Part shown: positions 1-55,189 of the stretch, one piece after another
Position numbering within the stretch: position 1 is the stretch's first letter
Layout: every line of letters begins with the position of its first letter
IMG/VR virus record: IMGVR_UViG_3300034012_003212
Span: 62,001 to 126,000 of that record
DNA: 64,000 nt
Direction: 5' to 3' (one strand)
Program-made: the position numbers and the translations under genes
Notes under the pieces: generated by a model
The model's input: only the letters and a program-made list of their open reading frames with translations
What the model was told of the DNA's origin: nothing
The model's database searches: none

Positions 1-1262
1 TCGCCTTTAACGTTGTGTGGTGCATTGTCAATATAGCAATCAAAAAAGGTGTTATGGGGTGTAGCAATATGACATGATTTTATCTTTGAGAACTCTATGT
101 TGTTGTCCAGCGAGATGTTACAGTAAAACAAATGAGACTCTTTTACTTTACATCCTATGAAGGTGCACTGTTCTATCACAGCACCTTTTATGTAACAGTC
201 GACGAAATCCATATCAGAAAATTTCCACGATCTAAGAAACTTTCCATCTTTTACTTGATACCGATGTAGGTCGTTATCAAGGTTTATCATGCCAGACTTC
301 AACCCGTTTGTATATATCAGATTGAATAGGATGTTTCTTATCTCATTCCAGTATGTTGCCAACAGCTGATCATCGTCCTTGAGATCGACAAAAACTTTGA
401 TCTTTGGATACATCACCTTAAAAACCCTGTGATTTATTATACTATTGACAAACTTTTTATGGTCTATCATCCTCTGTCTCAGGCTATCGACATCCGCTTG
501 ATCGTATGATGGAACCCTCAGGCATTCATATATGGTCAGAGCTGTATAATCAATGAGACTTAGTATATCTTCTATCTTTTCCTCATAATCCCGCCCTCCC
601 ATATACCTCATTTCAAGGTAACCAAATTCAAGCTTTGAGAAATTGAAACCAAAGTACTTGTCACTTGGTACGGTAAAACTCGAACGATTTATCGTCTTTA
701 TGTTATCTGTGAAGGAAAAAAGATTATTCGGAAGGACAAAATCTATAGACTTTGCAAAAACATTGTCCATCCTCTCGGGAAACTTATCGAATACATTATT
801 CTCATCGTAGGATAATATGAGTTTTAATGGATCCAACCCTGATAAATTTATGGTTTTATCAGGGGTCTTAAATGGATCAAAACTTATATTTACGTGTATG
901 CCAGAACGAGATGTGGTTTTTCCATTATCTCGTATGTAATTAAGAACTTTAGCTAGTATTATTTTTGCCTCATAATAAGGAGTAGGACCGGTGACCAATT
1001 CCATCATCGCCGGCCCTCCTGAAAAATCATGCTCTAGCTTATAGTTATAGTAAGAAACCTTCATCTCTGTGTGAGCTCCGGGTATCTTTTTTCCGCTAGG
1101 ATCTGTCTTAAATGCAGCAACGACCTTTTTTTCAAGGATATCTGATAGTTCGCGCGCAACTTTATTGAATCCCTTCTTACAAAAGAATTCAAACTCAAAT
1201 CCTATTATAACAGAATTCAGTATCGCGTTCTTATTTAAAAAATCCCTTGTTTTAAGGTTCAT
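1..1262 (-). CDS. Amidoligase-like enzyme (COOH-NH2 ligase type, Amidoligase_2-like) with a C-terminal beta-repeat-like region; runs off the left edge
   Basis: Absent from the ORF track; translated by hand from ATG at 1262, which overlaps the S1 gene stop: MNLKTRDFLNKNAILNSVIIGFEFEFF...MMELVTGP...SRSGIHVNISF...KYFGFNF...YLEMRYMGG. These match the GxExE / ExV / GxHxN / ExR ligase motifs. Frame stays open to position 1. Confidence 0.7.
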   Translation of the reverse strand, partial: MNLKTRDFLNKNAILNSVIIGFEFEFFCKKGFNKVARELSDILEKKVVAAFKTDPSGKKIPGAHTEMKVSYYNYKLEHDFSGGPAMMELVTGPTPYYEAKIILAKVLNYIRDNGKTTSRSGIHVNISFDPFKTPDKTINLSGLDPLKLILSYDENNVFDKFPERMDNVFAKSIDFVLPNNLFSFTDNIKTINRSSFTVPSDKYFGFNFSKLEFGYLEMRYMGGRDYEEKIEDILSLIDYTALTIYECLRVPSYDQADVDSLRQRMIDHKKFVNSIINHRVFKVMYPKIKVFVDLKDDDQLLATYWNEIRNILFNLIYTNGLKSGMINLDNDLHRYQVKDGKFLRSWKFSDMDFVDCYIKGAVIEQCTFIGCKVKESHLFYCNISLDNNIEFSKIKSCHIATPHNTFFDCYIDNAPHNVKG

Positions 1263-2388
1263 TTTCTGTGTATAATGTTGCTTGGATCAAATTCCGTTTT
1301 TCATTTATACTACTAACTACGATTTTTACCGTGTCCCCTTGCTTTATCCTTTGTTGTGGAGCAGTCACTGATTTGATGGGAACTGTTGTAATTATGTTTC
1401 CGAATTTAATGGTAACATGTGATCCGCGTATAGATTCCACTAGAACATCGACGCACAGATCACTATCGTTAGTTTCTATGATATTTTTTAGGTTCTTCAA
1501 TTGTTCGTACAACGCCTGAACAAAACTTTCATTTTGCGTGAGAACAAAATTCTTAGGCGGTATGACATCCCGGATCCAAACTTCTATTTCAGAACCAGGC
1601 CTTAAAAGCTTTGAAGAAAAATCAGCCGCAGTCTGTTTATTCATATCACCCACGGACAGAAGACCTGTCATTATGCCGTTAAACTCAACAAAAACTCCAG
1701 CATCTATCGATCCCGTCACTATGCCAACGTACAGATTCCTTATATCAAGGTCTGCCACCATCTTAGGCATGATGTGATCTATGTACTTCTTATTGGAAAC
1801 GATGAACGTGTTATTCGCATGGATATACGAATCTACCATCACTTTTATAGTCTTTCCAATGAGTGCTTCAAAATTTGTTATCTTATTAGCACTTGCGAGT
1901 GAACCTGGCAAAAATGCTTCAATGCCATTGATATCAACAAAATATCCCCCTTTGTTCTTCTGAAGGACCTTTGCATCATACACTTTCGTTTGCGCATCAA
2001 TCTGCGAAAAGAAATCATTGAAGATGGATTCACGCTGAGCCTCGGCGAAGCTTCCCATAAGACCACCGTCTGTTGAAATGATCTTTATCGTCTGCTTGCT
2101 TCCGTTTCTCACCGATTCGATAAAACTAGCGGCGTCCAAACCAAGGCCCTTGAGAAAATCTTTCTCTTTATTGATTTTAACACTCACAGCAGGGCAAGAT
2201 TCACCCGTTACTATGACCATGTTATCGTTGGAAGATAGGACGGAGTCTATTTCAAAGATTTGACCGATTGTTACTGATTTGTTCAACTCCCCCTGTGAAT
2301 TGTTAGATATCATCTCCATATAGAGAGAATCATCTATATCATGCGAAAAATCTTGCTGGCTGAAGAGATTCGCGGAAACGTATTTCAT
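1252..2388 (-). CDS. rpsA: Ribosomal protein bS1-like protein (tandem S1 OB-fold domains)
   Basis: NKGGYFVDINGIEAFLPGS resembles bS1 domain 2; YVGIVTGSIDAGVFVEFNGIMTGLLSVGDM resembles domain 3; a further degenerate S1 repeat lies at the C-terminus. Confidence 0.85.
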   Translation of the reverse strand: MKYVSANLFSQQDFSHDIDDSLYMEMISNNSQGELNKSVTIGQIFEIDSVLSSNDNMVIVTGESCPAVSVKINKEKDFLKGLGLDAASFIESVRNGSKQTIKIISTDGGLMGSFAEAQRESIFNDFFSQIDAQTKVYDAKVLQKNKGGYFVDINGIEAFLPGSLASANKITNFEALIGKTIKVMVDSYIHANNTFIVSNKKYIDHIMPKMVADLDIRNLYVGIVTGSIDAGVFVEFNGIMTGLLSVGDMNKQTAADFSSKLLRPGSEIEVWIRDVIPPKNFVLTQNESFVQALYEQLKNLKNIIETNDSDLCVDVLVESIRGSHVTIKFGNIITTVPIKSVTAPQQRIKQGDTVKIVVSSINEKRNLIQATLYTENEP

Positions 2389-6022: not shown

Positions 6023-7886
6023 AGTCTTCCTCCACCTTAGGCTTATTAAATTTCACATCACTGGATATCCTTGTGTCCTCGAACGCAGGCCGAAGTTCGA
6101 TTGAAGTCAATGAATCTTCGGATAATACGGTAGGGAGGCCGAAATTCACAAACTTTTCCACATCGTTGATATTAACTACACTTGGAACCTGGAAGTCCAC
6201 TCTGTCTATAATTTCTTCTGATGTTGTAGATGAATTGAATTCAACACTTCCTATGCCAAACTCAACGCTAGGGGTCTTCAATTCAACCATCTCCGTTATA
6301 TCCAGATCAACCGTTGGTGCTGTGAATTTTACTTCGGATAATTGATCATCAACTTTAGGGACATCGAAAGATATGTTTGATATATCAGTGGACACTGTCG
6401 GTAGTTCGAACGAGATGTCGTTGATTTCGGTGGCAACAGTAGGAGCTACGTATTCTATTGCTGCCAGCGACTCATCAACTTTAGGTTTGTCGAACGTGAC
6501 ATCTCCTATTGAACTATCAACTTTAGGCTTCTGTAGATTAACGTCGGATGATATAGTTGTCTCAAAAGAAGGTCTTACTAGATTCACATTTGAGATCTCT
6601 GTCTCGACCTTTGGCCTCATAAATTCTACTTGATTAGGCATATCTTCATCTAATTTTGGTTCTTCAAATTCAATTTGTGGTTCAATATTAACATCTTGCG
6701 TTGGCCTCTCAAATTCGATCGAGTTTCTTATGTCAGTTGTTACGCTCGGACGGCCAAATTCGATTAATCTTGGTGTTTCTCCTGTGATTCCGGCTGAGCT
6801 CTCAATGGCCTGCATTATCGTTCTTGCTTGTTCTGCTCTTGAAGCTGACATGTCCATGGAATTTAGTTCAGCTTGACGGATTCTTTCACGCTCTTCTCTT
6901 GGAAGAGCTTCAACCGTGTCAGCTTTAGTGAATTCCATATTATTCAGAAAATAGTCACGTATGTTGTTGTTGCTAGATGCAATTACATTCTCATAATTAT
7001 TTTCATACTCTCTTATGAACGGTGCTAAAAAACTCCTATAATTCGTCACATCACGAAAATCATTGAATGATGCACCGCTTCCCCCTTGTTTTATGATGAG
7101 ATCTCGTTTCATCTCACCGAGCATGTAGTTTAGAAGTTTATATGAGTTTGCCTCTTGTACCCTTCCAACTTTTATGTTAAATGATGCTCCGGCAGTTGTG
7201 TATTCATCCCCCTTTAGGGTTTTAGCAGGGACAGATGAACTAAAGTCGAATTCGCAATCAAAACACCTGAACGCAATGGCAGAAACGTGGTTCAACCAAT
7301 CAGGACGAAGAGAATTCCTGCCCTGTTGAACAAATGTCTTCAAATATCTCGCCTCTCCTGCTATCACCGTCATATTGAACCTCCGTTTATTCAACGGAAG
7401 AAGTTCACGAAAGTATAACCTGTCCCATGAAGCCTTTCTGTATAAATCAGCAAGAGCCGTCATACGAAGGTCCACCGTCTCGTAACAATCCAAAGTTAAT
7501 GTAACATCATCAATCTGGGTCTTTGAGTCGTTTGACGCAGAAGGATATCCCCATTTCCAAAGACCCTCGAGTCCTGATATCTGTTTAAAAAACCAAGGAA
7601 AATCATCAGAAACTCTGCTCAGAAGCCACCTGAACTCCTTGAGCGCTTCCGCCTTTCCTTGTTCTCCGGTCCTACGGAGATAACTTATAGCACTTTCATC
7701 CCTGTCCTCTGATAAGAGAAGACCTTGTGTGACTTCATTATCATTGTTGAGTGGCTCAAAATCAAATAGCACCCTAAATGTGATAAAAGACGGATCATTG
7801 TACCTTAACTTATCGTCAGGTGTTGTTCCAGCTGACTCGAAGACGAACTTCCTCTCGAGTCTACCGACGTGCATGATTCCGCTCAT
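6012..7886 (-). CDS. Probable baseplate/tail structural protein with a C-terminal 14-16 aa repeat array
   Basis: 624-aa ORF in the baseplate cluster; globular N-terminus (NDPSFITFRVLFDF...DCYETVDLRMTALADLYRKA) followed by repeats. Confidence 0.55.
   Translation of the reverse strand: MSGIMHVGRLERKFVFESAGTTPDDKLRYNDPSFITFRVLFDFEPLNNDNEVTQGLLLSEDRDESAISYLRRTGEQGKAEALKEFRWLLSRVSDDFPWFFKQISGLEGLWKWGYPSASNDSKTQIDDVTLTLDCYETVDLRMTALADLYRKASWDRLYFRELLPLNKRRFNMTVIAGEARYLKTFVQQGRNSLRPDWLNHVSAIAFRCFDCEFDFSSSVPAKTLKGDEYTTAGASFNIKVGRVQEANSYKLLNYMLGEMKRDLIIKQGGSGASFNDFRDVTNYRSFLAPFIREYENNYENVIASSNNNIRDYFLNNMEFTKADTVEALPREERERIRQAELNSMDMSASRAEQARTIMQAIESSAGITGETPRLIEFGRPSVTTDIRNSIEFERPTQDVNIEPQIEFEEPKLDEDMPNQVEFMRPKVETEISNVNLVRPSFETTISSDVNLQKPKVDSSIGDVTFDKPKVDESLAAIEYVAPTVATEINDISFELPTVSTDISNISFDVPKVDDQLSEVKFTAPTVDLDITEMVELKTPSVEFGIGSVEFNSSTTSEEIIDRVDFQVPSVVNINDVEKFVNFGLPTVLSEDSLTSIELRPAFEDTRISSDVKFNKPKVEEDFGS
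6015..6764 (-). repeat. About 17 degenerate protein repeats, consensus (V/I)xFxxPxVxxxI
   Basis: IEFGRPSVTTDIRNS / IEFERPTQDVNIEPQ / VEFMRPKVETEISN / VTFDKPKVDESLAA / ISFELPTVSTDISN / VKFNKPKVEEDFGS. Confidence 0.85.
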
Positions 7887-9121
7887 TCGCCTTGAAATTT
7901 TGTTATAAGCGCAGCATCTGGTGTGTTCTCTGTGTTTGGTATCGATAGATCAGAACGCTGCCATTCTTCTCTCCAGACAAAATCATCATGACCAAGTTCA
8001 AGGAACCTCTCATGGATCTTCTTGTCATAGTATGATGCTATATATCTCACGGCCCGTTGTATCTCTGCCCTTCTTGGTTCCTGTGTGTTGTTTCCGCCTG
8101 CATTCATGTACTGTATGTAACACAGTTTAGGAACGTGTATCATCCTCGTGCCAAGGAAACTCCTCACGACAAGTTCATAATCATCTGCTATGTGCAATCG
8201 AGGATTATGGCCTCCTATTTCGTGGTAGAACTTTCGCTCCCACGCGCGTATGTGATTGGGGCACGCAATGATATGCCTCATCGTTTTTGGATTGATGGGC
8301 ACAGTCTCACATGTGTACTGGGCGTTATTATAGTTCGTGGTGTAGTGTTTGCCGTAACCGTATCCCCAAAAATCCCCGTAATTAACACATCCTCCGGTTT
8401 CAAAAACCTCAGACGCGTCCGTGTATAGGAATTTTCCTTCCGGATATTCGCCGAAACCGCGTTTAACGTGATCGAGTGCCCAAGGAGTCAGAGCATCATC
8501 ATGATCGAGTTCGACGAGGTATTTTCCTGTACAAAGACCCGCTGCATTTCGCTTCACTTCTCCTATGATTCCGCTGGGTTTGTTTGATTTAAAAACACGT
8601 ATACGGTGGTCCTGGCTCGCAAGCTGCAGGAGCATATCAAAGGTCTTTCCTCCGTCATTTGAATCATCGTACAAGACCCATTCCCAATTTGAGTGCCACT
8701 GATTCTTGAGAGATGTGAAAACGCGATCGATTCGATTCCCGGTTCTGTACGTGGGGGTAAAACAGCTTATCAACGGATCTTCGTCATTCTTCTCCTGGTT
8801 TAAAATAGAGTCAATAAAACAGAAATACGCAGAATCTCCTATGTTGCCATCATCGGATTTTATATTTTCCACGTGTATCCATTTTCTCCTGATGCTATAT
8901 GGCGCGTTGTACAACTGTGCGAATAAAGACACATCAGGCCCGGTTGTTATGTACACCATAGGATTTATAGTCCTGATGATGAAATTGAGATCATCGGTAT
9001 GCGAAAAAAAGTGACACTCAAAATCATGGGATTCTGAAATCCACTGTACATTTGTTGAGTGTATCTCCGTCTTTACTTTACAATCCTTAGAGAATATCGC
9101 TACTACTGGTGTGATTGGCAT
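7883..9121 (-). CDS. Glycosyltransferase family 2 with an N-terminal extension
   Basis: ISCFTPTY...NWEWVLYDDS...GEVKRNAAGLCTGKYLVELDHDD...HIADDYEL (GT-A fold with DxD motif). Confidence 0.9.
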   Translation of the reverse strand: MPITPVVAIFSKDCKVKTEIHSTNVQWISESHDFECHFFSHTDDLNFIIRTINPMVYITTGPDVSLFAQLYNAPYSIRRKWIHVENIKSDDGNIGDSAYFCFIDSILNQEKNDEDPLISCFTPTYRTGNRIDRVFTSLKNQWHSNWEWVLYDDSNDGGKTFDMLLQLASQDHRIRVFKSNKPSGIIGEVKRNAAGLCTGKYLVELDHDDALTPWALDHVKRGFGEYPEGKFLYTDASEVFETGGCVNYGDFWGYGYGKHYTTNYNNAQYTCETVPINPKTMRHIIACPNHIRAWERKFYHEIGGHNPRLHIADDYELVVRSFLGTRMIHVPKLCYIQYMNAGGNNTQEPRRAEIQRAVRYIASYYDKKIHERFLELGHDDFVWREEWQRSDLSIPNTENTPDAALITKFQGE

Positions 9122-15525: not shown

Positions 15526-15563
15526 TATATATAAAAAAAGGGATACGCTTTTTACGTATCCCT
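15526..15563 (-). terminator. Intrinsic terminator whose U-tract runs into a late-promoter-like TATATATA
   Basis: Perfect 9-bp stem AGGGATACG/CGTATCCCT (15539-15563), then a T run and TATATATA, 5 nt before the gp13 ATG. Confidence 0.75.
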
Positions 15564-15603
15564 CGTTTCCTTATCAAATTATGATAGGGAAACCCCCGTT
15601 ATT

Positions 15604-15828: not shown

Positions 15829-16185
15829 TCATCTCACAGTTAAGATAGAATCTACTTCCATTTTCATTTCAGGCAGCTGTGACGAAACACACGCAAAGTA
15901 TTTTTTTACCTTTACATCATTTGCAATTAGGGTCTTCTTTATATTGCATATAAGCTGCGAGGACAGCTCTTTGTTAATGTAAACGATCGAGCTTTTCTTG
16001 TTCTTAAACGCAAATAAAAATTCATCCAACAACATCATATTGAGCGCGAATGTATACGAGTCTTTATCCGCATATGAAGAACTATTCGAAGAAGATAAGA
16101 TCTTTGCAACATTGATAACATATGGTCTATTTCCTAACGCATACTTAGGAAGACTATACTTTTGATCGCAAAAAATGAAATTCAT
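15829..16185 (-). CDS. Hypothetical protein
   Basis: 118-aa ORF in a co-oriented operon. Confidence 0.6.
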   Translation of the reverse strand: MNFIFCDQKYSLPKYALGNRPYVINVAKILSSSNSSSYADKDSYTFALNMMLLDEFLFAFKNKKSSIVYINKELSSQLICNIKKTLIANDVKVKKYFACVSSQLPEMKMEVDSILTVR

Positions 16186-16197
16186 CTATGAATTATT

Positions 16198-16785
16198 TTA
16201 TCCGATTAAAGACCTATGGATTGCATCCTTAATCGCATCCGAAACATCTTCTTTATTCACACCTTCGAGTAAAACATCGAGCACTTCATCAAAAACACCT
16301 TCATCAAATGATTCTGACACAAATTGCATGAATTGTTTAGTTGGAAGATCGACCTTGATCTCAATACTTAAAGTGTTGCTAGATGTTTTTGCCTTTGCGA
16401 GAAGATTTGCTGCAAAACTTCCAGCCTTTGACTTTTTCTGCTGCTGTTGTTGAACAGGGGCCTCTACTGGTTTTACTGGTTCTGGAATGACTTCAATAGA
16501 CGCGGATTCTGTCTGTTTTTTATGTTCCTCGAATGATTTTGCTGGACCTGTTCTAGAAGGAAACCTTTCTTCCTTTGGATACATCCTTCTTAAAGAAACT
16601 TCATCCATTGCAATATTCCTATCATTGAGTATGATGAATGCCTTTCCGTAAAGATGCATAGGAATTGACCTACCGCTAGCCGGAATCACAACGTCCTGTT
16701 TTCCGTCGAACATCTGTTCGGCTGGTTCAACGACAGCAAATTTATCGTCAGTTAGCCACTGGATGAATTGTTGACCGTTACTCAT
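16198..16785 (-). CDS. Hypothetical protein
   Basis: 195-aa ORF with a central P/E/Q-rich linker. Confidence 0.65.
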   Translation of the reverse strand: MSNGQQFIQWLTDDKFAVVEPAEQMFDGKQDVVIPASGRSIPMHLYGKAFIILNDRNIAMDEVSLRRMYPKEERFPSRTGPAKSFEEHKKQTESASIEVIPEPVKPVEAPVQQQQQKKSKAGSFAANLLAKAKTSSNTLSIEIKVDLPTKQFMQFVSESFDEGVFDEVLDVLLEGVNKEDVSDAIKDAIHRSLIG

Positions 16786-17111
16786 GCAAACAACCTCATT
16801 AAATTATCTTCGTAAAATCTCCTTTTGTCTTGATCCATCTGATCGATCTGGGATAACACAGTATTTTTCAATTGTATTAGAACCTTAGAAAAATGGACCA
16901 CTGCACCATCCGCTAGAACGTCTTTTTGGTTAGACATGAAACTACCGGTTATTCCTTTTAACCTCCAGAATATGTAAGGAGGAGAATCTATATATTCAAT
17001 GGTAACCTGCTTCCAACCAGGAGGTTGTATGAACATCCTATCAGCTTGGTCCCATTCAAGTGATTCTTCTAAATTGTAATCGAGCTTCATACTATATTCC
17101 TTGGCCACCAA
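16782..17111 (-). CDS. Hypothetical protein
   Basis: 109-aa ORF overlapping both neighbours. Confidence 0.6.
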   Translation of the reverse strand: MVAKEYSMKLDYNLEESLEWDQADRMFIQPPGWKQVTIEYIDSPPYIFWRLKGITGSFMSNQKDVLADGAVVHFSKVLIQLKNTVLSQIDQMDQDKRRFYEDNLMRLFA

Positions 17112-17779
17112 TCATCTTTCTGTATACCCATGAGCTCTAAAACTAATTCCAGTTCCCGGTCTGCGTTTATCCTATTGGGTAATTGCCAGTGCTGGCTCCC
17201 AACGGGTTTGGTGTGCTTTACGACAACAGAATCAACTATTCCTAGACCTTCATACTTTAGTTCCTTTGCCCATATTATATCCTGCCCCCAGCCGGAGTAT
17301 GTGATCTTTAACGTCCATAGTAGATTCTTCAGGACCTCAGATTTAAACAATGGGCACATTATCTCGACAAAATTAGTCCTTCTGAATCCATTTTTATTCC
17401 TATTGACGACGAGTTCGAAGCTTCTAAAACTATCTTGTGACAATGACGGCTGGCATATATTGCAGTCATTTGATTCCGCCTCGTCGAATAATCTTACTAT
17501 GTCATCAACTGTACCAAAATCAACATCATAATCAGGAAGCCAGATGTACTTATACTTATTAAAAACTTCCGGCCAATGCGTGTTCAGTATATTGTACAGT
17601 ATATGGTGCTTGAACCCCTTGAATGAAAACGTCTTCATGGACTTTGAAATATCAAAATCCGGTGGTATTGTGTCGAACGATATGTGCGCAACATCGAATC
17701 CAGGGCCGCCGTACAAAGAATTGTAAAAGCCTCCTGGTGCTATCGTACACAACACTAGTCTATCGTTATTGCTTCGCAT
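17087..17779 (-). CDS. DUF707-family putative glycosyltransferase (GT-A-like)
   Basis: YKYIWLPDYD...CQPSLSQDS...RRTNFVEIMCPLF...SGWGQDIIW. Confidence 0.8.
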   Translation of the reverse strand: MRSNNDRLVLCTIAPGGFYNSLYGGPGFDVAHISFDTIPPDFDISKSMKTFSFKGFKHHILYNILNTHWPEVFNKYKYIWLPDYDVDFGTVDDIVRLFDEAESNDCNICQPSLSQDSFRSFELVVNRNKNGFRRTNFVEIMCPLFKSEVLKNLLWTLKITYSGWGQDIIWAKELKYEGLGIVDSVVVKHTKPVGSQHWQLPNRINADRELELVLELMGIQKDDWWPRNIV

Positions 17780-18002
17780 TCTGCTGCTTCTCTTGATTTG
17801 ACGACATTGACTCTATCGTCTTTGTCTTATCAAAAAATGTCACGGCGTCATATACCATCTTGGACTCCTGGAGTGTGTATGCGCCTCTTTGCTGAGCCCG
17901 CTCAACTGCACTTATGAGTATGTTGATCGCTTTTACTGGATCATCAACAACAAATTGAGGTTGTTCCTGTTGTTTTTCTGCCGTCGTATTTGTTTCTTCC
18001 AT
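17766..18002 (-). CDS. Small conserved-type hypothetical viral protein
   Basis: AINILISAVERAQQRGAYTLQESKMVYDAV. Confidence 0.65.
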   Translation of the reverse strand: MEETNTTAEKQQEQPQFVVDDPVKAINILISAVERAQQRGAYTLQESKMVYDAVTFFDKTKTIESMSSNQEKQQNAKQ

Positions 18003-18011
18003 CTTTACTCC

Positions 18012-18854
18012 TTATTTAAGTATGAATTTTTTTAATAGATTAAGATAATCCTGTTGTTTCATCGATTCTAATCTTTCTTTGTCCGATACTATGCATTCCA
18101 TCTCATTGATAAAAGCATCATTGTTTCCGTCAAAAATAGAAACAATGTTGAATTCATATGGGGTTTTTGCAAGTTCATCTGAATCAAAACCATCTACAAT
18201 CTTTTGTGCAACATCAAAATGCCTCTCGTAGTAGTGTGTGTTGTCAGAGAAATGGTGGTATGTGCCCAGTTTAATGTTTTCATACCCCCTCAACTTCAAT
18301 TGATGCAGCATCGATTGCTGTACTGTTGAGAAGAATGGCGCGTCATATTGCAGTCCATAGAATATATCGTTTGATCTCATCTGTACCTTCATGTTTAATT
18401 TCGAATCTCTGACCCAAAAATTAACATACATCGTACACACGAAATCTTTTACACCACTTTTCTGGTAATCAGGGGTGTTAAACACCATAACAGCTTGTCT
18501 TGTGTTTATATCATTCGCGAGACAGTCCAATGCCCACTGGAACTGATCATGATTCCTCTTTTGAATGATGTAGCCATAATTGGAATTTATGATTCCATTC
18601 ACTCTGAGATTATCCCAGAAATTAGAGAAGTGGCGGATCTTGTCAGTAGAAAGATCGCACAACATGTACCACCACAATTCTCCTGCAAAATATTTCCAGT
18701 TGAACTTCCTCGATGAGAAGTTCATGATACAGAGTCTGGGATCGATCTCTAGGTGTGTGAGAGTCTTTTCCCTCACCTTTAGGTTTCTTGGCGCACATTC
18801 ATCCTGCATTGTAATCAGAAGATCGTACACACACTGATTTAGGCTTTTAGGCAT
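18012..18854 (-). CDS. gp42: dCMP hydroxymethylase-like enzyme (thymidylate synthase superfamily, cytosine-specific clade)
   Basis: YFAGELWWY, KDFVCTMY and MRSNDIFYGLQYD parallel T4 gp42 (RELEWY, SDFMCTNT, MRSNDVVFGFRND); Asp rather than Asn at the specificity position. Confidence 0.8.
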   Translation of the reverse strand: MPKSLNQCVYDLLITMQDECAPRNLKVREKTLTHLEIDPRLCIMNFSSRKFNWKYFAGELWWYMLCDLSTDKIRHFSNFWDNLRVNGIINSNYGYIIQKRNHDQFQWALDCLANDINTRQAVMVFNTPDYQKSGVKDFVCTMYVNFWVRDSKLNMKVQMRSNDIFYGLQYDAPFFSTVQQSMLHQLKLRGYENIKLGTYHHFSDNTHYYERHFDVAQKIVDGFDSDELAKTPYEFNIVSIFDGNNDAFINEMECIVSDKERLESMKQQDYLNLLKKFILK

Positions 18855-18884: not shown

Positions 18885-19970
18885 TTAAAAGAGCGCAACA
18901 GATCTGTTGGGATTTTGAAATTTATTCTTCTCGTCATTCTCAAAATTGTACTGATAACTGCTTCTTGAAAGATGCACGGATCCAGGCTTTTCCATGAATT
19001 TTGATGAGTATTCCTCTGGATCGATTGTATACCAAAAATCTGGCCATGTTATAGGGGCAAATCCCAATCTAGAACTATGTTCCATAAGTTCATCGTTGAA
19101 CAATCTCATAACATTGGATCGTTCTTCCCTTGAACCAAAGAATGGAGTTCCCTTGTACCAACCGGTTTTAGGTATACGTCTGTCCTCGTTTTCTATTGGG
19201 AGGAGGCACACAGGAGAAACAGTTTCAAGTTCGTACGAATCCATAAGTTTTACGAGGGATTCCATGTATTTGTTGCATAACTTTACGGCGGAATCCTGTG
19301 GATTAGATTCGCGAAGCAAATGGTGCCTAACATCTATATTACCGAAGTATGTTATGACATTCTTTGGGTAAACACCATCATAGATGAATTTGGATAAATC
19401 GCCGTCTTTTATGGCTCCATATAGCGTCTTTCCGTCGTTTCTATTTATGTTCGATCCAGGAACATACACTGAAACAGTGTGACTATCGCCCATGGCAAAC
19501 ACTTCGGATCGAAGGACGACTCGAACGGTTGGCACATTTGAACATATGTCACTGAACTGTGATGGATTCAATGATTTCCAAAAATCTTCACATGAGTTCA
19601 TCCTAGACAGAAGAACTGTTCCATAATCTGGCATTCTTTCATTCAAGCAGAATATGTCTCCGTTGAATATAGCCAGTCTGTTTATTCGATGTGCGTTTTC
19701 GTCACTCGCGCCCGAGAACATATTGAATGTTCCCTTATAGTCCATGGGAAGAAGGACTAGCCATGCGTCGAATTCATTCACGTCCTGTCCCTTTTCGAGT
19801 AACTTTGCATCAATTCCGGCGTGTCTCAGCTGATTGATGACAAGAAATGTCCAGGAGGATTTATGGCTTTCTGGCTTTTTGCTATACGTAGAAATAACGT
19901 CATCTACACAGACCTTTTTGCCATGCAATCTTTTTGATAGATCATAGACATCAATAAATGTTTGCATCAC
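18885..19970 (-). CDS. Two-domain protein: T4 beta-glucosyltransferase-like N-terminal domain plus SGNH-like domain; putative DNA-modifying enzyme
   Basis: N-terminus DVNEFDAWLV...FNMFSG...FNGDIFCLNERMPDY; C-terminus GDSH, DGKTLYG, YFGNID, SVHL; lies directly upstream of the hydroxymethylase. Confidence 0.5.
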   Translation of the reverse strand: MMQTFIDVYDLSKRLHGKKVCVDDVISTYSKKPESHKSSWTFLVINQLRHAGIDAKLLEKGQDVNEFDAWLVLLPMDYKGTFNMFSGASDENAHRINRLAIFNGDIFCLNERMPDYGTVLLSRMNSCEDFWKSLNPSQFSDICSNVPTVRVVLRSEVFAMGDSHTVSVYVPGSNINRNDGKTLYGAIKDGDLSKFIYDGVYPKNVITYFGNIDVRHHLLRESNPQDSAVKLCNKYMESLVKLMDSYELETVSPVCLLPIENEDRRIPKTGWYKGTPFFGSREERSNVMRLFNDELMEHSSRLGFAPITWPDFWYTIDPEEYSSKFMEKPGSVHLSRSSYQYNFENDEKNKFQNPNRSVALF

Positions 19971-20263
19971 TTTCCATTCAGATAGTTTTCTAATGCCTGT
20001 ATGTATGCGACAGCATCCAAGAGATTATCTTGTTTATGTGTATAGCTCTCTCTGGATAGTTTTAGGGCTATCATGGCCTTGTACATGTGTTCTGCGTCAA
20101 GTGTTAGGCCAGTCATGCCATTGAATATTTGCGCAGCTCTCGCCATACCTTCCGAGAATGGTCCATACTGTCTTTCCTTTTCCTCCGACCTCTGGTTAAC
20201 TATTTTATCTGCCTGTTGCAGTATACTATCTTCATTGGTCTTTGTTTGTTTCTTGGGTTTCAT
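19967..20263 (-). CDS. DUF6378-family protein (MazG-like all-alpha nucleotide pyrophosphatase candidate)
   Basis: ILQQADKIVNQRSEEKERQYGPF...MIALKLSRE...DNLLDAVAYI. Confidence 0.75.
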   Translation of the reverse strand: MKPKKQTKTNEDSILQQADKIVNQRSEEKERQYGPFSEGMARAAQIFNGMTGLTLDAEHMYKAMIALKLSRESYTHKQDNLLDAVAYIQALENYLNGK

Positions 20264-20280
20264 ATGGTATAGTTATGATT

Positions 20281-20700
20281 CTAAAAGACTTCTTCTGTTT
20301 TTACCCATTCCATGTATTTTATCAGGACTCTGTCCTTTGGTTTAACGCGGTTGTCATGTCTTTGAAAAATCATCCATGAATCTCTTGCGTATTCCCCGAT
20401 TCCATGCAATTCACTAGGATCTTCCCCGTTCCACTGGAGCCATTCATTCGAGAATCGTATGAGCTTCTTTGAACGAATATTCTGAAACCCGAGTGGTTTT
20501 ATACATCGCGCGACTTCAATTGGATCTGCCTTAGATAATCTATCTGCATTGGGGTACTTTTCAAAAAATTCATGTCTGACCAGGTCAACTTGACGAAAAC
20601 TCGTCTGGTTCAACATCATGCAGACCACCAGCATCTTCCATGGATCATCTCGGTATATTTCTTGTCTCAGATTATACGGACTTAATTTAGGATGTTTCAT
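20281..20700 (-). CDS. MBD4-like HhH-GPD DNA glycosylase (T/U:G mismatch type)
   Basis: DDPWKMLVVCMMLNQT...FFEKYP...IKPLG...ELHGIGEYARDSWMIF...VKPKDRVLIKY; catalytic Asp retained (cf. MBD4 VHPEDHKLNKY). Confidence 0.85.
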   Translation of the reverse strand: MKHPKLSPYNLRQEIYRDDPWKMLVVCMMLNQTSFRQVDLVRHEFFEKYPNADRLSKADPIEVARCIKPLGFQNIRSKKLIRFSNEWLQWNGEDPSELHGIGEYARDSWMIFQRHDNRVKPKDRVLIKYMEWVKTEEVF

Positions 20701-20752: not shown

Positions 20753-21070
20753 TTGTACACCTTTTCTGATATAAAAAACGGACTTCACACGCTGAATGAA
20801 GCTTCAACTGAATTGAATTCTAGCCTCAAGAAAGTACACAAACTTGGGTTGGAGTTACAAAACATACAAAAAGATGTCATAGATTTGTATGAAGACAAAA
20901 AGAAAATTGACCCTAAGTCAAAGACACTGAAGAAGTTAGAAGCTAAGATAAATTCTTTGTTGAAGACGAAAGTAAACATTGAAAAAGAGATGGATCGAGA
21001 AACGAGAAAGCTCGAAAGACACATCTCGCAATTGGATCCACAGGGGAAAATTCAGAAATTTTTCACATAA
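20753..21070 (+). CDS. Small coiled-coil protein, possibly a head-internal protein (TTG start)
   Basis: TLNEAS motif, K-rich coiled coil, preceded by GATATATA. Confidence 0.6.
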   Translation: MYTFSDIKNGLHTLNEASTELNSSLKKVHKLGLELQNIQKDVIDLYEDKKKIDPKSKTLKKLEAKINSLLKTKVNIEKEMDRETRKLERHISQLDPQGKIQKFFT

Positions 21071-21082
21071 AAACATCATACT

Positions 21083-21673
21083 ATGCCAGCAAAATCTAAA
21101 GCACAAAAGCGACTCATGACATGGGCGCTCGGAGTCAAAAAGGGCAAAGCAAAAACATCCTCGAAAAAAGTAAAGGATATTGCCAAGGATATGACAGTAA
21201 AGGAACTAGAGAAATACGCAAAAACAAAAATGAGTATGCCAGAACGAATCGAAGAGGCGAATTCAGTCGTGTGTTTCGATGACTTTGAATTCAAGAATTC
21301 AACGAATAAACGAAGGATTCTTGAGGCAAAGGATGATGAAGAAACAACAGATGTAACACCAGAGCCGGAGACAGAGATGCCTTCAGGTGATATGGCTGAT
21401 ACGCTGATGGCTCCCGAGGACGCAGAAGAAGGTGATAATGTTTTGATGAACATAAAATCTCCCGAGAAGATGTCAAGGACAAAGGATTCCTATGAATGGA
21501 GCGAACCTGAGTCAAAGATGATTCAATTTCAATTGAAGAACATCATTGAAAAGGCAGAAGAGCTCATACAACTCTTTGATGGCTATGACGAAATTGAAGA
21601 TTGGATTCAAGCAAAAATGACAGTTGCTGACAACTACATAAGTAACGTCCGTGACTACATGAAGCACAAGTAA
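21083..21673 (+). CDS. DUF3008-like N-terminal domain plus acidic linker and C-terminal helical domain
   Basis: MPAKSKAQKRL...KDMTVKELEKYAKT; C-terminal EIEDWIQAKMTVADNYISNVRDYM. Confidence 0.7.
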   Translation: MPAKSKAQKRLMTWALGVKKGKAKTSSKKVKDIAKDMTVKELEKYAKTKMSMPERIEEANSVVCFDDFEFKNSTNKRRILEAKDDEETTDVTPEPETEMPSGDMADTLMAPEDAEEGDNVLMNIKSPEKMSRTKDSYEWSEPESKMIQFQLKNIIEKAEELIQLFDGYDEIEDWIQAKMTVADNYISNVRDYMKHK

Positions 21674-21731: not shown

Positions 21732-22373
21732 TTACACTTTATACCATTCACGATTTCTAGATTCATCACTCTCGCACCAATCATCAAACGATATGGCATT
21801 TGCATCCTTTTCTGAAAGTATCGGATCAATTCCTAGATCTTTCCAGTCACAATCAAATGAGTCCCATCTGATTGATCTTTCCTTTTCATGAAACCTGTTC
21901 TCGTCGCATTTATAGCAAACATCCGCAACATCACTTAGAACCTGAAACCCATTTGCAAAACCGCTAGGAATCCATACCATCTTTGGTTCATTATCATTTA
22001 GATGTATCTTCACATGCTTACCGAATGTAGGGGATCCTCTACGGAGATCTAGTTCAACGAGCAAGATCTCGCCCCTGACAACTCTTATCAGTTTCCCCAT
22101 ACCAAACATGTACTGAAAGTGCATACCTCGGATCACGCCACGCTTTGATCTTGAGTGATTATCCTGAACGAATGATCCCGGAAGATCGTTATACGCGAAT
22201 GAGATCTTATTGAAACTTTCTTGAAAGAAACCACGATCATCCTCAAATCTCTTTCCTGTTATGATTTCCACGCCACCGAGAACAACTTCTATGCTATCTA
22301 TTGCATTTTTGCTCATAAGGCTGATTTTCTTGTGTATTGAATCCAAGGATTCTCGTGAATTTTTTAGTTCCAT
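21732..22373 (-). CDS. rmlC: dTDP-4-dehydrorhamnose 3,5-epimerase
   Basis: FEDDRGFFQESF...FVQDNHSRSKRGVIRGMHFQ...DLRRGSPTFG...WIPSGFANGFQVLS. Confidence 0.95.
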   Translation of the reverse strand: MELKNSRESLDSIHKKISLMSKNAIDSIEVVLGGVEIITGKRFEDDRGFFQESFNKISFAYNDLPGSFVQDNHSRSKRGVIRGMHFQYMFGMGKLIRVVRGEILLVELDLRRGSPTFGKHVKIHLNDNEPKMVWIPSGFANGFQVLSDVADVCYKCDENRFHEKERSIRWDSFDCDWKDLGIDPILSEKDANAISFDDWCESDESRNREWYKV

Positions 22374-54023: not shown

Positions 54024-54669
54024 ATAAATGCTGCAATCTATTTTTCAAGATTCGTCTTCCCTTATGAATGTATATCTTGCACTTGGGCATGTCTAGTTTA
54101 TACTTTTCTGCAAGATCCTTGTAACTCATCTTGTGGACTTCCCGATCCCAAATTATCCCCTTGTATCTATCATCAAGCTCTCGTATTTCTTTTATTACTG
54201 ATCGAATGAGGTATCTGAGGGCATCGTTTTTTATCTGTTTATCCGCATCGGGATTATCAATGTACTGATCCTTGACAGAAGATTCTATAAACATCTTAGC
54301 CTGAGACTGAGACGAATCCGAAGATCCTGCGGTGTGTGTTAATTCACCGTTGTTCATGGAAACTTCTTTGTATTTTTTCTTTTTACTCAGCTTGATAAGA
54401 GCTTCATTTTTTGCTATGGTATAAGACCATGTAGAAAATTTGAAGTATTCATTATAGCTGTCAATATTTATAAATATCTTCAGTAATGCATCACTGACGC
54501 AATCTTCCACGTCCATGTGTGAAAGTTCATTCGCTGCATTATAGTATTTATTTATAAAGAACTGAAAACGAGGCTTGAGCTCATTGTACAAAATGATGTA
54601 ATTCTCATGCGTCCTCGTGTTGAAATACTGCATGCCCAATTGCTGCAGATCTCTACCTTCTCTTCTCAT
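54001..54669 (-). CDS. ECF-type sigma-70 family RNA polymerase sigma factor
   Basis: Region 2 DVEDCVSDALLKIF...KFSTWSYTIAKN; region 4 MSYKDLAEKYKL...KIYIHKGRRILK. Likely start MRREG at 54669. Confidence 0.85.
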   Translation of the reverse strand: MRREGRDLQQLGMQYFNTRTHENYIILYNELKPRFQFFINKYYNAANELSHMDVEDCVSDALLKIFINIDSYNEYFKFSTWSYTIAKNEALIKLSKKKKYKEVSMNNGELTHTAGSSDSSQSQAKMFIESSVKDQYIDNPDADKQIKNDALRYLIRSVIKEIRELDDRYKGIIWDREVHKMSYKDLAEKYKLDMPKCKIYIHKGRRILKNRLQHLYDEWKSI

Positions 54670-55189
54670 TATATTCCTCCAAAATATAAGGGTAGTGATT
54701 ATGGAAATCACTGAAACTTCCGTGTCTTATCTTTAGCTTATCGGAATTTAAGACTGCGAGATGACGAATATCTCGATACTCTTCTTTCCAGTATATGCAC
54801 TTAAATCCTGAATTTATGAGGATTTTCATACATACTTCGCATGGAGAGTGTGTTAGAAGAACGACATAATCCTCTGGATTGTGTTCGTTGAACTTTGCAA
54901 CAAGATTCATTTCTGCATGGACAAACCCACTAGATCCGGATTCGAGGGAATTCTCCTCGCCGGACGTTGCTGGATTTATTTCAGCTCCTGGATATGAACC
55001 GTTGTAACCAAAACTGCCAATCTTTGAAAAGTCTTTTTTCAGTGCAATTGCACCAACCTTCAAAGTCTTTGAAACAGAAAGGCTTGCAATCTGACAAACA
55101 AAGTCAGTGAAAACATCTATCTTCTGGGACTTCCTCTTTGAACCCATGATCGAATCAACTTCCGTGGATGGTCTGAACTCGCTGCTCAT
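54653..55189 (-). CDS. dCMP deaminase
   Basis: KVGAI...GYNG...HAEMN...THSPCEVCMK (zinc-binding HAE and PCxxC). Confidence 0.9.
   Translation of the reverse strand: MSSEFRPSTEVDSIMGSKRKSQKIDVFTDFVCQIASLSVSKTLKVGAIALKKDFSKIGSFGYNGSYPGAEINPATSGEENSLESGSSGFVHAEMNLVAKFNEHNPEDYVVLLTHSPCEVCMKILINSGFKCIYWKEEYRDIRHLAVLNSDKLKIRHGSFSDFHNHYPYILEEYNEKRR

What the first reader, a model, noticed from the sequence alone, without database searches (positions are those of the whole stretch)
20281..20700. Minimal stand-alone MBD4-like glycosylase in a bacteriophage
Seen: 139 aa closely tracking the eukaryotic MBD4 catalytic domain (DPWK...LN.T, KPLG, ELHGIG.Y..DS..IF, V.P.D..L.KY). Established: MBD4 excises T, U and 5hmU opposite G, which are the deamination products of 5mC, C and 5hmC. 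Inference: a fully C-modified genome escapes host Ung repair, so a dedicated glycosylase makes sense as the first gene of the modification operon. It could instead attack host DNA.
Basis: partly seen in the sequence, partly recalled or inferred. Interest (0 to 1): 0.7.

Follow-up and report, generated by a model that had tools for sequence, protein, structure and literature searches.

The report
Phage MBD4-type mismatch DNA glycosylase
A large freshwater bacteriophage encodes a 139-residue stand-alone copy of the catalytic domain of the animal DNA-repair enzyme MBD4. It sits at the head of a gene cluster that probably makes hydroxymethyl-cytosine DNA, and it most likely removes the mispaired bases left when those modified cytosines lose their amino group.

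Summary
ORF 20281-20700 (-) encodes a 139-aa protein that aligns end to end with the MBD4 glycosylase domain (E 4.5e-30; model TM 0.91, rmsd 1.3 Å). Mig, MutY and Nth score about 26 orders of magnitude worse. The catalytic Asp (D123), the base-reading Gln (Q13) and Tyr (Y104) are kept. The helix-plugging Arg468 is Gln here. There is no Fe-S cluster, no catalytic Lys and no MBD domain.

The window is part of a 260-kb freshwater jumbo phage. The gene heads a tightly packed minus-strand cluster that includes a thymidylate-synthase homologue with the dCMP-hydroxymethylase signature and a GT-A glycosyltransferase.

Relatives are common in viral contigs (at least 577) and almost absent from prokaryote genomes. 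They lie within about 5 kb of a dCMP-specific TS homologue in five lineages, including the fully 5mC phage Xp12. The link is not obligatory: only 2 of 50 records with the same hydroxymethylase type carry the glycosylase, and many homologues sit in replication or repair modules.

Best reading (0.55): a monofunctional glycosylase for T, U or 5-substituted U opposite G, repairing deaminated modified cytosine in the phage's own DNA. Activity is untested. I found no description of this in the literature searched.

The parts
20281..20700 (-). Stand-alone MBD4-type HhH-GPD DNA glycosylase, 139 aa. Predicted catalytic Asp is D123; pocket residues are Q13 and Y104; the plug residue is Q32, in place of MBD4 Arg468.
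   Evidence: residue roles from PMC3479182
20701..20752 (.). A 52-bp divergent intergenic region between the glycosylase and the + strand genes 20753-21070 and 21083-21673 (DUF3008). This is the presumed start of the minus-strand transcription unit.
   Evidence: No sigma-70-like signal above chance. The same divergent arrangement occurs in relatives L004, L005, L008 and L013.
19967..20263 (-). DUF6378 protein, 98 aa, function unknown. It recurs next to the glycosylase or next to hydroxymethylase-type TS genes in other phages.
18885..19970 (-). A 361-aa phage-only protein (phrog_13881) with a GDSH motif. It may have an SGNH-hydrolase-like fold.
18012..18854 (-). Thymidylate-synthase homologue of the dCMP hydroxymethylase type, 280 aa. 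It is the only TS-family gene in the 260-kb record.
   Evidence: Best PDB hit is T4 dCMP hydroxymethylase at 1.8e-18, against ThyA at 2.7e-9. Motifs DFVCT and RSNDIFYGLQYD give D143, C146, D169 and D177 in E. coli ThyA numbering, read against the criteria. Single copy.
17766..18002 (-). 78-aa ORF of unknown function, conserved in relatives.
17087..17779 (-). GT-A-fold glycosyltransferase (DUF707-like), 230 aa, with an invariant D83-x-D85 motif. It is a candidate sugar transferase for hydroxymethyl-cytosine.
16782..17111 (-). 109-aa ORF of unknown function in the same cluster.
16198..16785 (-). 195-aa ORF of unknown function in the same cluster.
15829..16185 (-). 118-aa ORF of unknown function; the last gene of the cluster.
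15538..15564 (-). Terminator-like hairpin (11-bp stem followed by a T run) that ends the minus-strand cluster.
54653..55189 (-). dCMP deaminase, 178 aa, located elsewhere in the window. It belongs to the phage's pyrimidine metabolism.

Best explanation
The gene encodes an active, monofunctional MBD4-type glycosylase. It binds duplex DNA through the HhH hairpin and two loops and flips out a uracil-type base that is mispaired with G: thymine, uracil, 5-hydroxymethyluracil or a related 5-substituted uracil. Gln13, Tyr104 and a main-chain amide read the flipped base, and Asp123 helps cleave the glycosidic bond. The resulting abasic site is handed to host enzymes, because the phage record has no Xth, Nfo or UvdE homologue. 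Repair synthesis opposite G then draws on the phage-modified dCTP pool and restores the modified cytosine. The phage probably replaces C with 5-hydroxymethyl-C, possibly glycosylated, so deaminated bases in its DNA are 5-substituted uracils rather than uracil. Host Ung should not remove these (my knowledge of Ung's specificity, not tested here). The enzyme would therefore guard the phage's own genome against C-to-T mutation, for example damage accumulated in the virion and repaired after injection. Shown: homology, fold, conserved catalytic residues, gene context and recurrence of that context. Inferred: the substrate, the DNA modification, and the timing and benefit.
For: - Identity and fold: MBD4 domain at E 4.5e-30 over the full length; TM 0.91 and rmsd 1.3 Å to structures bound to T:G, 5hmU:G and abasic DNA.
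- Active site: the residues reported as essential in MBD4 (Q449, Y540, D560; PMC3479182) are Q13, Y104 and D123 here. They are kept in 139, 148 and 146 of 150 stand-alone or viral homologues. The DNA-contact loops contain no indels.
- Monofunctional type: Tyr, not Lys, occupies the HhH position; only two Cys, so no Fe-S cluster.
- Context: it is the first gene of a tight cluster containing a TS homologue with the dCMP-hydroxymethylase signature and a GT-A glycosyltransferase. The order is conserved in relatives only 50-70% identical.
- Independent recurrence: in the Bradleyvirinae phages (Xp12 with fully 5mC DNA, AXL1 with Xp12-like restriction resistance, Donnerlittchen) the homologue sits directly upstream of NTP-pyrophosphohydrolase, an N177D TS homologue, dCMP deaminase and DHFR. 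L015 pairs it with an N177D ThyA-like gene, L081/082 with a D169N+N177D 5-hydroxy-dCMP-synthase type, and L152 with a hydroxymethylase type.
- Genome level: 6 of 7 lineages with complete or near-complete genomes that carry the glycosylase also carry an N177D TS homologue.
- Substrate precedent: 5hmU:G and T:G are documented MBD4 substrates, and the 5-hydroxymethyl group makes no protein contact.
- Maintenance: the gene is intact in four other lake metagenomes, with only V26I and R124K differences.
Against: - No activity data exist for any phage member.
- The phage's DNA modification is inferred, not measured. No MazG-type dCTPase was found, only a dUTPase-family gene.
- Only 4 of 79 loci and 2 of 50 whole records with the same hydroxymethylase type have the glycosylase, and neither of the 2 records at least 90% complete does. 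It is therefore dispensable for such phages.
- Most viral homologues lie beside PolB, FEN, UvdE, dUTPase or unknown genes, with no TS gene nearby. One complete 174-kb genome has the glycosylase but no TS-family or C5-methylase gene.
- The background frequency of N177D TS genes in large phages is unknown, so the 6-of-7 figure may overstate the link.
- Arg468, described as a key residue for locking the flipped base in MBD4, is Gln here, and pocket residue Gly471 is Phe. Specificity may therefore differ.
- If the hydroxymethyl group carries a sugar, the deaminated base may not fit the pocket.
Confidence: 0.55

Rival explanations
1. It is a general base-excision repair enzyme with no special tie to cytosine modification. 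It would clear U:G and T:G mispairs, or other damaged pyrimidines, from replicating phage DNA, as one of the repair genes a large phage carries.
For: In other viral contigs the homologue sits next to UvdE (8 loci), a 5'-3' exonuclease/FEN, PolB or dUTPase. Canonical Asn-type ThyA is the nearby TS in L045, L047 and L058. A complete genome carries the glycosylase with no TS-family gene. Phages with the same hydroxymethylase type mostly lack the glycosylase.
Against: Adjacency to a dCMP-specific TS homologue recurs within about 5 kb in five lineages, out of the nine I count as having both genes. My rough binomial estimate, assuming about 10% chance adjacency per lineage, gives p of about 1e-3. 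For ordinary C-containing DNA the host's Ung already handles U:G, so the benefit would be smaller.
Confidence: 0.2
2. It is a counter-defence enzyme. The chemistry is the same, but the lesions would come from host or competitor DNA cytosine deaminases attacking the incoming phage genome rather than from spontaneous decay.
For: The conserved uracil-type pocket and G-mispair architecture would serve equally well. Glycosylases and base modifications are established players in phage-host conflict (PMC11078745 and bioRxiv 10.1101/2025.10.29.685425).
Against: Nothing in the locus points to a defence or anti-defence island. There is no PADLOC match apart from a weak hit to a nicking-endonuclease model. 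The neighbouring genes are biosynthetic.
Confidence: 0.1
3. It is an offensive enzyme. It would create abasic sites in host or rival-phage DNA, possibly after deamination of unmodified C, while the phage's own modified DNA is spared.
For: The phage encodes a deaminase-family protein, and T-even phages are known to destroy C-containing host DNA (my own knowledge).
Against: The deaminase looks like an ordinary dCMP deaminase and lies 34 kb away. The MBD4 pocket binds cytosine only as an inhibitor, and the pocket residues are conserved here. Undamaged host DNA has almost no T:G or U:G sites.
Confidence: 0.07
4. It is a step in, or quality control of, the modification pathway itself, not repair of deamination damage. 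For example, it might remove wrongly incorporated or unmodified bases so that they are replaced, or perform a group-transfer reaction as the glycosylase-like aGPT-pyrophosphorylases are proposed to do.
For: It is the first gene of the biosynthetic cluster. Enzymes termed DNA base glycosylase-like have been proposed to act in thymidine hypermodification (PMC8256090).
Against: About 45% identity to a bona fide glycosylase, with all catalytic and uracil-reading residues kept. There is no match to aGPT-pyrophosphorylase families in Pfam. Phages with the same pathway mostly lack it.
Confidence: 0.05

Closest known systems
MBD4 (MED1) C-terminal glycosylase domain of animals and other eukaryotes (PDB 1ngn, 4e9e, 4ew0, 6vjw)
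   Same: Same fold over the whole length (TM 0.91, rmsd 1.3 Å) and 40-45% identity. The catalytic Asp, the Gln and Tyr that read the flipped T/5hmU, Leu466 and Leu506 are all kept, and the DNA-contact loops have the same length. Neither protein has an Fe-S cluster or a catalytic Lys.
   Different: The phage protein has no methyl-CpG-binding domain or linker; it is stand-alone. The plug residue Arg468 is Gln (Q in 79 of 150 viral homologues, against K/R in 67 of 84 eukaryotic ones). Gly471 is Phe and Leu508 is Phe. It is encoded by a phage inside a nucleotide-modification cluster. Activity is untested.
Xp12 QNN97216 / AXL1 gp65 / Donnerlittchen gp32 (Bradleyvirinae phage proteins annotated 'hypothetical', 'ENDO3c domain' or 'endonuclease III')
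   Same: Same family: 31-34% identity over 91% of the query, and all invariant residues are shared in alignment A3. They lie directly upstream of the dCMP-modifying TS homologue.
   Different: Small siphoviruses whose modification is 5mC (measured for Xp12, inferred for the others). About 160 aa. They are not the first gene of their operon. The AXL1 paper judged the active site absent or uncertain and drew no link to MBD4 or to T:G repair.
Mig.MthI (PDB 1kea), the T/U:G mismatch glycosylase of Methanothermobacter
   Same: An HhH-GPD glycosylase specific for T or U opposite G (PMC8861164). From my own knowledge, it is encoded beside a C5-methyltransferase and its role is to counter 5mC deamination, which is the same logic proposed here.
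   Different: Only distant similarity (E 4e-4, TM 0.68, 22% identity). Mig has an Fe-S cluster and is 221 aa. It is paired with a sequence-specific DNA methylase, not with nucleotide-level replacement of cytosine.
Vsr endonuclease with Dcm in E. coli; TDG/MUG family
   Same: Same biological task: correcting T:G that arises from 5mC deamination. In the Vsr case the repair gene is linked to the modification gene (my own knowledge).
   Different: Unrelated folds and chemistry. Vsr nicks the strand, and TDG/MUG belong to the UDG superfamily. No sequence similarity was detected here.
Endonuclease III (Nth) and MutY
   Same: Same HhH-GPD superfamily. Public records label the phage homologues 'endonuclease III'.
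   Different: Scores are far below the family cut-offs: Nth 33.7 bits against 211.7, MutY 18.6 against 286.5. There is no Fe-S cluster and no catalytic Lys. In the rooted tree they form the outgroup on very long branches.

Membership tests
MBD4-type glycosylase domain (HhH-GPD superfamily) | HhH-GPD fold matching the solved MBD4 domain over its full length | tested here: met
   pLDDT 95.9. TM 0.90-0.92 and rmsd 1.2-1.4 Å to 16 MBD4 chains. phmmer E 4.5e-30 covering residues 4-133.
MBD4-type glycosylase domain (HhH-GPD superfamily) | Catalytic Asp after the HhH hairpin (human D560 / mouse D534) | tested here: met
   D123 aligns with the Asp that is mutated to Asn in the 4evv and 4ew0 chains. 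It is Asp in 146 of 150 viral and 84 of 84 eukaryotic sequences. Its role is described in PMC3479182.
MBD4-type glycosylase domain (HhH-GPD superfamily) | Uracil-type base pocket: Gln449 and Tyr540 (also Leu466) | tested here: met
   Q13, Y104 and L30.
MBD4-type glycosylase domain (HhH-GPD superfamily) | Arg468 finger that fills the gap left by the flipped base | tested here: not met
   The position is Gln32 here. Viral homologues have Q 79, L 31, C 21 and R/K 17 of 150; eukaryotes have K/R in 67 of 84. The loop length is unchanged, and the orphan G is read by main-chain carbonyls in MBD4.
MBD4-type glycosylase domain (HhH-GPD superfamily) | No [4Fe-4S] cluster and no catalytic Lys (monofunctional type) | tested here: met
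   Only C27 and C66 are present. Tyr104 occupies the HhH position where bifunctional enzymes have Lys.
MBD4-type glycosylase domain (HhH-GPD superfamily) | Excision of T, U and 5hmU opposite G | not testable with these tools
   This needs an enzyme assay.
Full-length MBD4 protein | N-terminal methyl-CpG-binding domain joined to the glycosylase domain | tested here: not met
   The whole protein is 139 aa and consists of the glycosylase domain alone. Eukaryotic hits carry the match at the C-terminus of 220-1040-aa proteins.
Endonuclease III (Nth) / MutY equivalogs | Score above the curated family cut-off; Fe-S cluster cysteines | tested here: not met
   TIGR01083 scores 33.7 bits against 211.7; TIGR01084 scores 18.6 against 286.5. 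Only two Cys are present.
dCMP hydroxymethylase (neighbouring gene 18012-18854) | Catalytic Cys146, N177D (dCMP substrate), L143D/E (non-methyl product) and D169 retained (not a 5-hydroxy-dCMP synthase), in E. coli ThyA numbering | tested here: met
   Motifs DFVCT and RSNDIFYGLQYD, read against the criteria in PMC13326640. The best solved relative is T4 dCMP hydroxymethylase at 1.8e-18. The product itself was not measured.
Repair gene linked to a cytosine-C5 modification gene (Mig/M.MthTI, Vsr/Dcm logic) | Recurrent physical linkage of the glycosylase to the cytosine-modifying gene in independent lineages | tested here: inconclusive
   Linked within about 5 kb in five lineages. Six of 7 near-complete genomes with the glycosylase have an N177D TS homologue. 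Against this, only 2 of 50 records with the hydroxymethylase carry the glycosylase, and most glycosylase loci have no TS gene nearby. No background rate is available.
GT-A glycosyltransferase (gene 17087-17779) | GT-A Rossmann-like fold with a DxD motif | tested here: met
   pLDDT 92.6. Foldseek finds TarP, POMGnT1, GalNAc-T2 and hyaluronan synthase at E 1e-6 to 1e-5 and TM 0.5-0.64. D83 and D85 are invariant. The acceptor substrate is unknown.

The most novel reading that the evidence does not exclude
Stand-alone MBD4-type glycosylases are essentially a viral invention. They would be a widespread, so far unrecognised phage repair module that safeguards genomes built from C5-substituted cytosine (5mC, 5hmC, 5hoC and their sugar derivatives). 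The glycosylase domain of eukaryotic MBD4 would then descend from such a phage enzyme and have been fused later to a methyl-CpG-binding domain for the same job.
Probability: 0.3. Interest if true: 0.8.

Novelty: new variant of a known kind. Interest (0 to 1): 0.6.

Why it matters
Phages that replace cytosine with 5mC, 5hmC or related bases are a central topic in phage-host conflict, but how they cope with the mutagenic deamination of those bases has hardly been addressed. A dedicated phage T/5-substituted-U:G glycosylase would be a viral counterpart of the pairing of cytosine methylation with mismatch repair seen in archaea (Mig), bacteria (Vsr) and animals (MBD4, TDG). The family also occurs in the classic 5mC phage Xp12, where a knock-out and mutation-spectrum experiment should be feasible. 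The phyletic pattern is also notable: many viral members, almost none in prokaryote genomes, and eukaryotic MBD4 as a derived clade. This bears on the origin of an enzyme of animal epigenetic maintenance. Finally, a 139-aa enzyme that may accept bulky 5-substituents could be a useful reagent for detecting deaminated modified cytosines.

Tried and rejected
- Megablast of the 8.4-kb region against GenBank phages found no match. The phage has no cultured close relative.
- PHROGs has no family for the glycosylase.
- The sigma-70 promoter scan found no more sites than shuffled sequence does, so I name no promoter.
- The word-indexed protein search gave only 4 hits because of its length filter. The exhaustive HMMER search was needed.
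- Alignment A1 was too diverse for pattern scanning.
- The genome search 'relatives' is not available for virus records.
- Two pattern scans of 185,579 prokaryote genomes found 0 and 1 relatives. This is pattern-limited and does not prove absence.
- The 354-aa protein downstream of the glycosylase in 'type B' phages is not a detectable homologue of the window's 361-aa protein. That protein and nine other frequent neighbour families have no Pfam or PHROG match, apart from an FkbM methyltransferase.
- A canonical C5 DNA methylase as an alternative 5mC source is absent from the window's genome and from four other large glycosylase-bearing genomes.
- No AP endonuclease (Xth, Nfo, UvdE) was found in the genome.
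- Strain variation from four other lakes gave only two substitutions in the gene, too few for a dN/dS estimate.
- I expected the glycosylase to be common among phages with the same hydroxymethylase type.
- Literature searches for a described phage MBD4-like enzyme found none. The only mention found is the AXL1 'ENDO3c' note.
Full report
**1. The observation.**
ORF 20281-20700 on the minus strand encodes 139 aa. Against all PDB chain sequences the first 15 hits are MBD4 glycosylase domains, at E 4.5e-30 to 1.4e-27. They align to residues 4-133 with a single one-residue gap. The next hits are Mig.MthI (4e-4), MutY (7e-4) and Nth (7e-3). Pfam assigns HhH-GPD above its cut-off. NCBIfam scores for Nth and MutY are far below theirs: 33.7 against 211.7 bits and 18.6 against 286.5.

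An AlphaFold2 model (pLDDT 95.9) superposes on MBD4 structures bound to T:G, 5hmU:G or abasic DNA at TM 0.90-0.92 and rmsd 1.2-1.4 Å. Mig is next at TM 0.68. A public gene call that starts at Met28 (112 aa) is too short.

**2. It is a phage.**
The window is part of a 260,658-bp IMG/VR virus record that CheckV estimates as 88% complete. It contains a major head protein, head protease, endolysin, tail fibres, large terminase and a head-tail adaptor. Near-identical sequence is present in about 20 freshwater and lake metagenome runs from 2016 to 2025. In four of them the gene is intact, with only V26I and R124K differences.

**3. Active site.**
I used the alignment together with the residue roles in PMC3479182.
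- Kept: Q449 is Q13, Y540 is Y104, D560 is D123, L466 is L30 and L506 is L70.
- Changed: R468 (the residue that fills the vacated space) is Q32, G471 is F35 and L508 is F72.

The mapping is self-consistent, because every cited human residue lands on the expected residue in the aligned mouse sequence. Across 150 stand-alone or viral homologues, D123 is kept in 146, Y104 in 148, Q13 in 139 and N31 in 150. Position 32 is Q (79), L (31), C (21) or R/K (17), whereas eukaryotes have K/R in 67 of 84.

The protein has two cysteines, so no Fe-S cluster, and Tyr where bifunctional HhH enzymes have the catalytic Lys. This predicts an active, monofunctional, uracil-type-specific glycosylase with a variant plug residue.

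**4. The locus.**
The gene is the first of nine co-directional ORFs (20700 down to 15829). They are separated by small gaps of up to 30 nt or overlap by up to 25 nt. The run is preceded by a 52-bp divergent intergenic region and followed by an 11-bp-stem terminator-like hairpin at 15564-15538.

The fourth gene is the only TS-family gene in the record. Its best solved relative is T4 dCMP hydroxymethylase (1.8e-18, against 2.7e-9 for ThyA). PMC13326640 gives diagnostic positions in E. coli ThyA numbering: N177D means a dCMP substrate, L143D/E a non-methyl product, and D169N a 5-hydroxy-dCMP synthase. The window protein reads D143, C146, D169 and D177, which is the hydroxymethylase type.

Two genes further on is a DUF707-like protein. 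Its model (pLDDT 92.6) has a GT-A glycosyltransferase fold, and it carries an invariant DxD motif. The 361-aa protein between the glycosylase and the TS gene belongs to a phage-only family with a GDSH motif and a possible SGNH-like fold. DUF6378 is of unknown function.

Elsewhere the genome has a dCMP deaminase and a dUTPase-family gene. It has no C5 DNA methylase, no MazG and no Xth, Nfo or UvdE. The inference is hydroxymethyl-cytosine DNA, possibly glycosylated. This has not been measured.

**5. Relatives and their contexts.**
An exhaustive HMMER search of 1.84 billion cluster representatives found 2,290 hits at E up to 1e-3 and 990 at E up to 1e-10. These are a mix of 125-170-aa stand-alone proteins from metagenomes and long proteins whose C-terminus matches. 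Those I looked up that carry a source name are eukaryotic: MBD4 of a shark, and proteins of lamprey, spider, abalone and Acrasis.

IMG/VR holds at least 577 viral stretches that encode a relative. Two pattern scans of 185,579 prokaryote species genomes found 0 and 1. GenBank phages with a homologue are the Xp12, AXL1 and Donnerlittchen group, cyanophage S-TIM54 and a partial match in an Aeropyrum virus.

The gene order glycosylase, DUF6378, 361-aa protein, TS homologue is conserved in relatives only 50-70% identical.

In the Bradleyvirinae the homologue lies directly upstream of NTP-pyrophosphohydrolase, a TS homologue (GLPYD, that is N177D), dCMP deaminase and DHFR. Xp12 DNA is fully 5mC (PMC7653180), and AXL1 shows Xp12-like restriction resistance.

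Further adjacencies to a dCMP-specific TS gene are:
- L015: a ThyA-like gene with N177D and L143 kept, which is methylase-like.
- L081/082: D169N plus N177D, the 5-hydroxy-dCMP-synthase type.
- L152: the hydroxymethylase type, in a different gene order.

At genome level, an N177D TS homologue is present in 6 of 7 complete or near-complete lineages that carry the glycosylase:
- the window's own genome;
- the Bradleyvirinae;
- S-TIM54;
- G026 (93% complete);
- G036 (100%);
- G076 (91%).

The exception is G037 (100% complete).

**6. Limits of the link.**
Most of the 84 glycosylase loci have no TS gene within 5 kb. Their neighbours include PolB, a 5'-3' exonuclease, UvdE, dUTPase, an FkbM-type methyltransferase and several unknown families. 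Three loci have a canonical Asn-type ThyA nearby.

From the other side, 319 IMG/VR stretches encode relatives of the window's TS homologue, and 72 of 79 fetched loci carry the D143/D169/D177 signature. Only 4 of those 79 have the glycosylase within 8 kb. Only 2 of 50 whole records have it, and neither of the two that are at least 90% complete does.

The glycosylase is therefore an optional accessory. I have no background rate for N177D TS genes in large phages, so the genome-level co-occurrence is suggestive only. By my count, adjacency occurs in five of nine lineages that have both genes. A rough binomial estimate, assuming about 10% chance adjacency per lineage, gives p of about 1e-3. However, DNA-metabolism genes cluster in phage genomes anyway, which inflates such adjacency.

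**7. Phylogeny.**
An unrooted quick tree of 170 domain sequences has a supported split (SH-aLRT 95). On one side are the window protein, 52 short proteins and 17 phage-locus proteins. On the other is the mostly eukaryotic set.

A careful tree of 89 sequences rooted with E. coli Nth and MutY places the eukaryotic proteins as a derived clade (support 93/94) inside a grade of phage proteins. The window protein sits in a 98/93 clade of phage sequences. The outgroup branches are very long (4.5-5 changes per column) and only 139 columns were used, so the root position is tentative.

**8. Mechanism and rivals.**
The best-supported reading is repair of deaminated modified cytosine in the phage's own DNA by a monofunctional T/U/5-substituted-U:G glycosylase, with host enzymes completing the repair (confidence 0.55).

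The rivals are:
- generic base-excision repair unrelated to modification (0.2);
- counter-defence against enzymatic deamination (0.1);
- attack on host or rival DNA (0.07);
- a role inside the modification pathway (0.05).

The conserved uracil-type pocket argues against action on normal C, 5mC or 5hmC, because cytosine binds MBD4 only as an inhibitor. The 5-hydroxymethyl group of 5hmU makes no protein contact in MBD4, which leaves room for 5-substituents. Whether a sugar would fit is unknown, and the G471F change lies in the pocket wall.

**9. Comparison with what is known, and novelty.**
The enzyme belongs to the MBD4-type branch of HhH-GPD glycosylases. It fails two features of full-length MBD4: the MBD domain and the Arg468 plug.

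Pairing a mismatch-repair gene with a cytosine-C5 modification gene is known from Mig.MthI with its neighbouring methylase and from Vsr with Dcm. That comparison rests on my own knowledge; Mig's properties are from PMC8861164. A weak PADLOC hit to a 221-position 'type II nicking endonuclease' model may reflect such Mig-like proteins. This is my guess from the matching length.

In the searchable literature I found no description of a phage MBD4-type enzyme. The AXL1 paper recorded only an 'ENDO3c' domain with doubtful active site, 'found only in Xp12'. I therefore rate this a new variant of a known kind, of moderate to high interest. It is testable in Xp12 or AXL1.

Noticed in passing
window 20281-20700 (-): The public gene call for this protein starts at Met28 (112 aa, P0001). 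That cuts off about 24 conserved N-terminal residues, including the essential Gln13. The 139-aa ORF is the correct one.
   Followed up: yes
window 21732-22373 (-) and 7883-9121 (-): A dTDP-4-dehydrorhamnose 3,5-epimerase (E 8e-54) lies between the major head protein and the modification cluster, and a GT2 glycosyltransferase lies further along. These phage-encoded sugar-nucleotide genes might feed DNA glycosylation, or they might modify the host surface.
   Followed up: partly
window 18885-19970 (-): A 361-aa phage-only protein (phrog_13881) with a GDSH motif. The Atlas structure of a look-alike resembles SGNH/GDSL hydrolases. A homologue again sits next to the glycosylase in the unrelated locus L038.
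   Followed up: partly
window 19967-20263 (-); L045, L047, L152, L119, L145, L147, L168: DUF6378 recurs immediately beside the glycosylase in three different gene orders. It also lies about 1.9 kb from hydroxymethylase-type TS genes in loci that lack the glycosylase. It looks like an unrecognised component of cytosine-modification or nucleotide-metabolism modules. The PHROG label 'phosphofructokinase' is probably wrong.
   Followed up: partly
L006-L035 ('type B' IMG/VR jumbo-phage contigs): About 20 contigs share the order 659-aa, 526-aa, FkbM-type methyltransferase, glycosylase, 354-aa, 651-aa. Apart from the methyltransferase, none of these proteins has a Pfam or PHROG match. The near-complete member G026 also has a hydroxymethylase-type TS gene about 100 kb away, plus a canonical ThyA.
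   Followed up: partly
L030, L043, L048, L056, L057, L068 (also L009, L077): A UvdE UV-damage endonuclease (E 3e-61) lies next to or near the glycosylase in eight viral loci. This suggests a small phage excision-repair module in which UvdE could supply the strand incision.
   Followed up: no
L081/L082 (G076, G077) 40249-40638: A divergent TS homologue with D169N plus N177D, the published signature of 5-hydroxy-dCMP synthases, lies about 5 kb from the glycosylase. The search reported one in-frame TAA within the match.
   Followed up: partly
L032, L039, L040, L042, L044, L050, L052, L055, L062, L065, L069, L074 ('type C'): In these loci the glycosylase is 254-284 aa, with an extension of about 120 residues beyond the catalytic domain and conserved unknown neighbours of 390, 186 and 334 aa. 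The complete 174-kb genome G037 of this type has no TS-family or C5-methylase gene.
   Followed up: partly
L003/L106 (cyanophage S-TIM54, OP053362.1: 142324-146233 and 175198-175584): This cultured cyanophage carries the glycosylase. About 30 kb away it has an N177D TS homologue (GVPLD) next to a C5 DNA methylase-like gene, which suggests modified cytosine in its DNA.
   Followed up: partly
tree: When rooted with E. coli Nth and MutY, eukaryotic MBD4 domains form a derived clade within a grade of phage stand-alone proteins. The family is almost absent from 185,579 prokaryote genomes.
   Followed up: partly
window 1252-2388 (-): A 378-aa protein with an S1 RNA-binding domain (E 8e-14) is encoded in the phage.
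   Followed up: no
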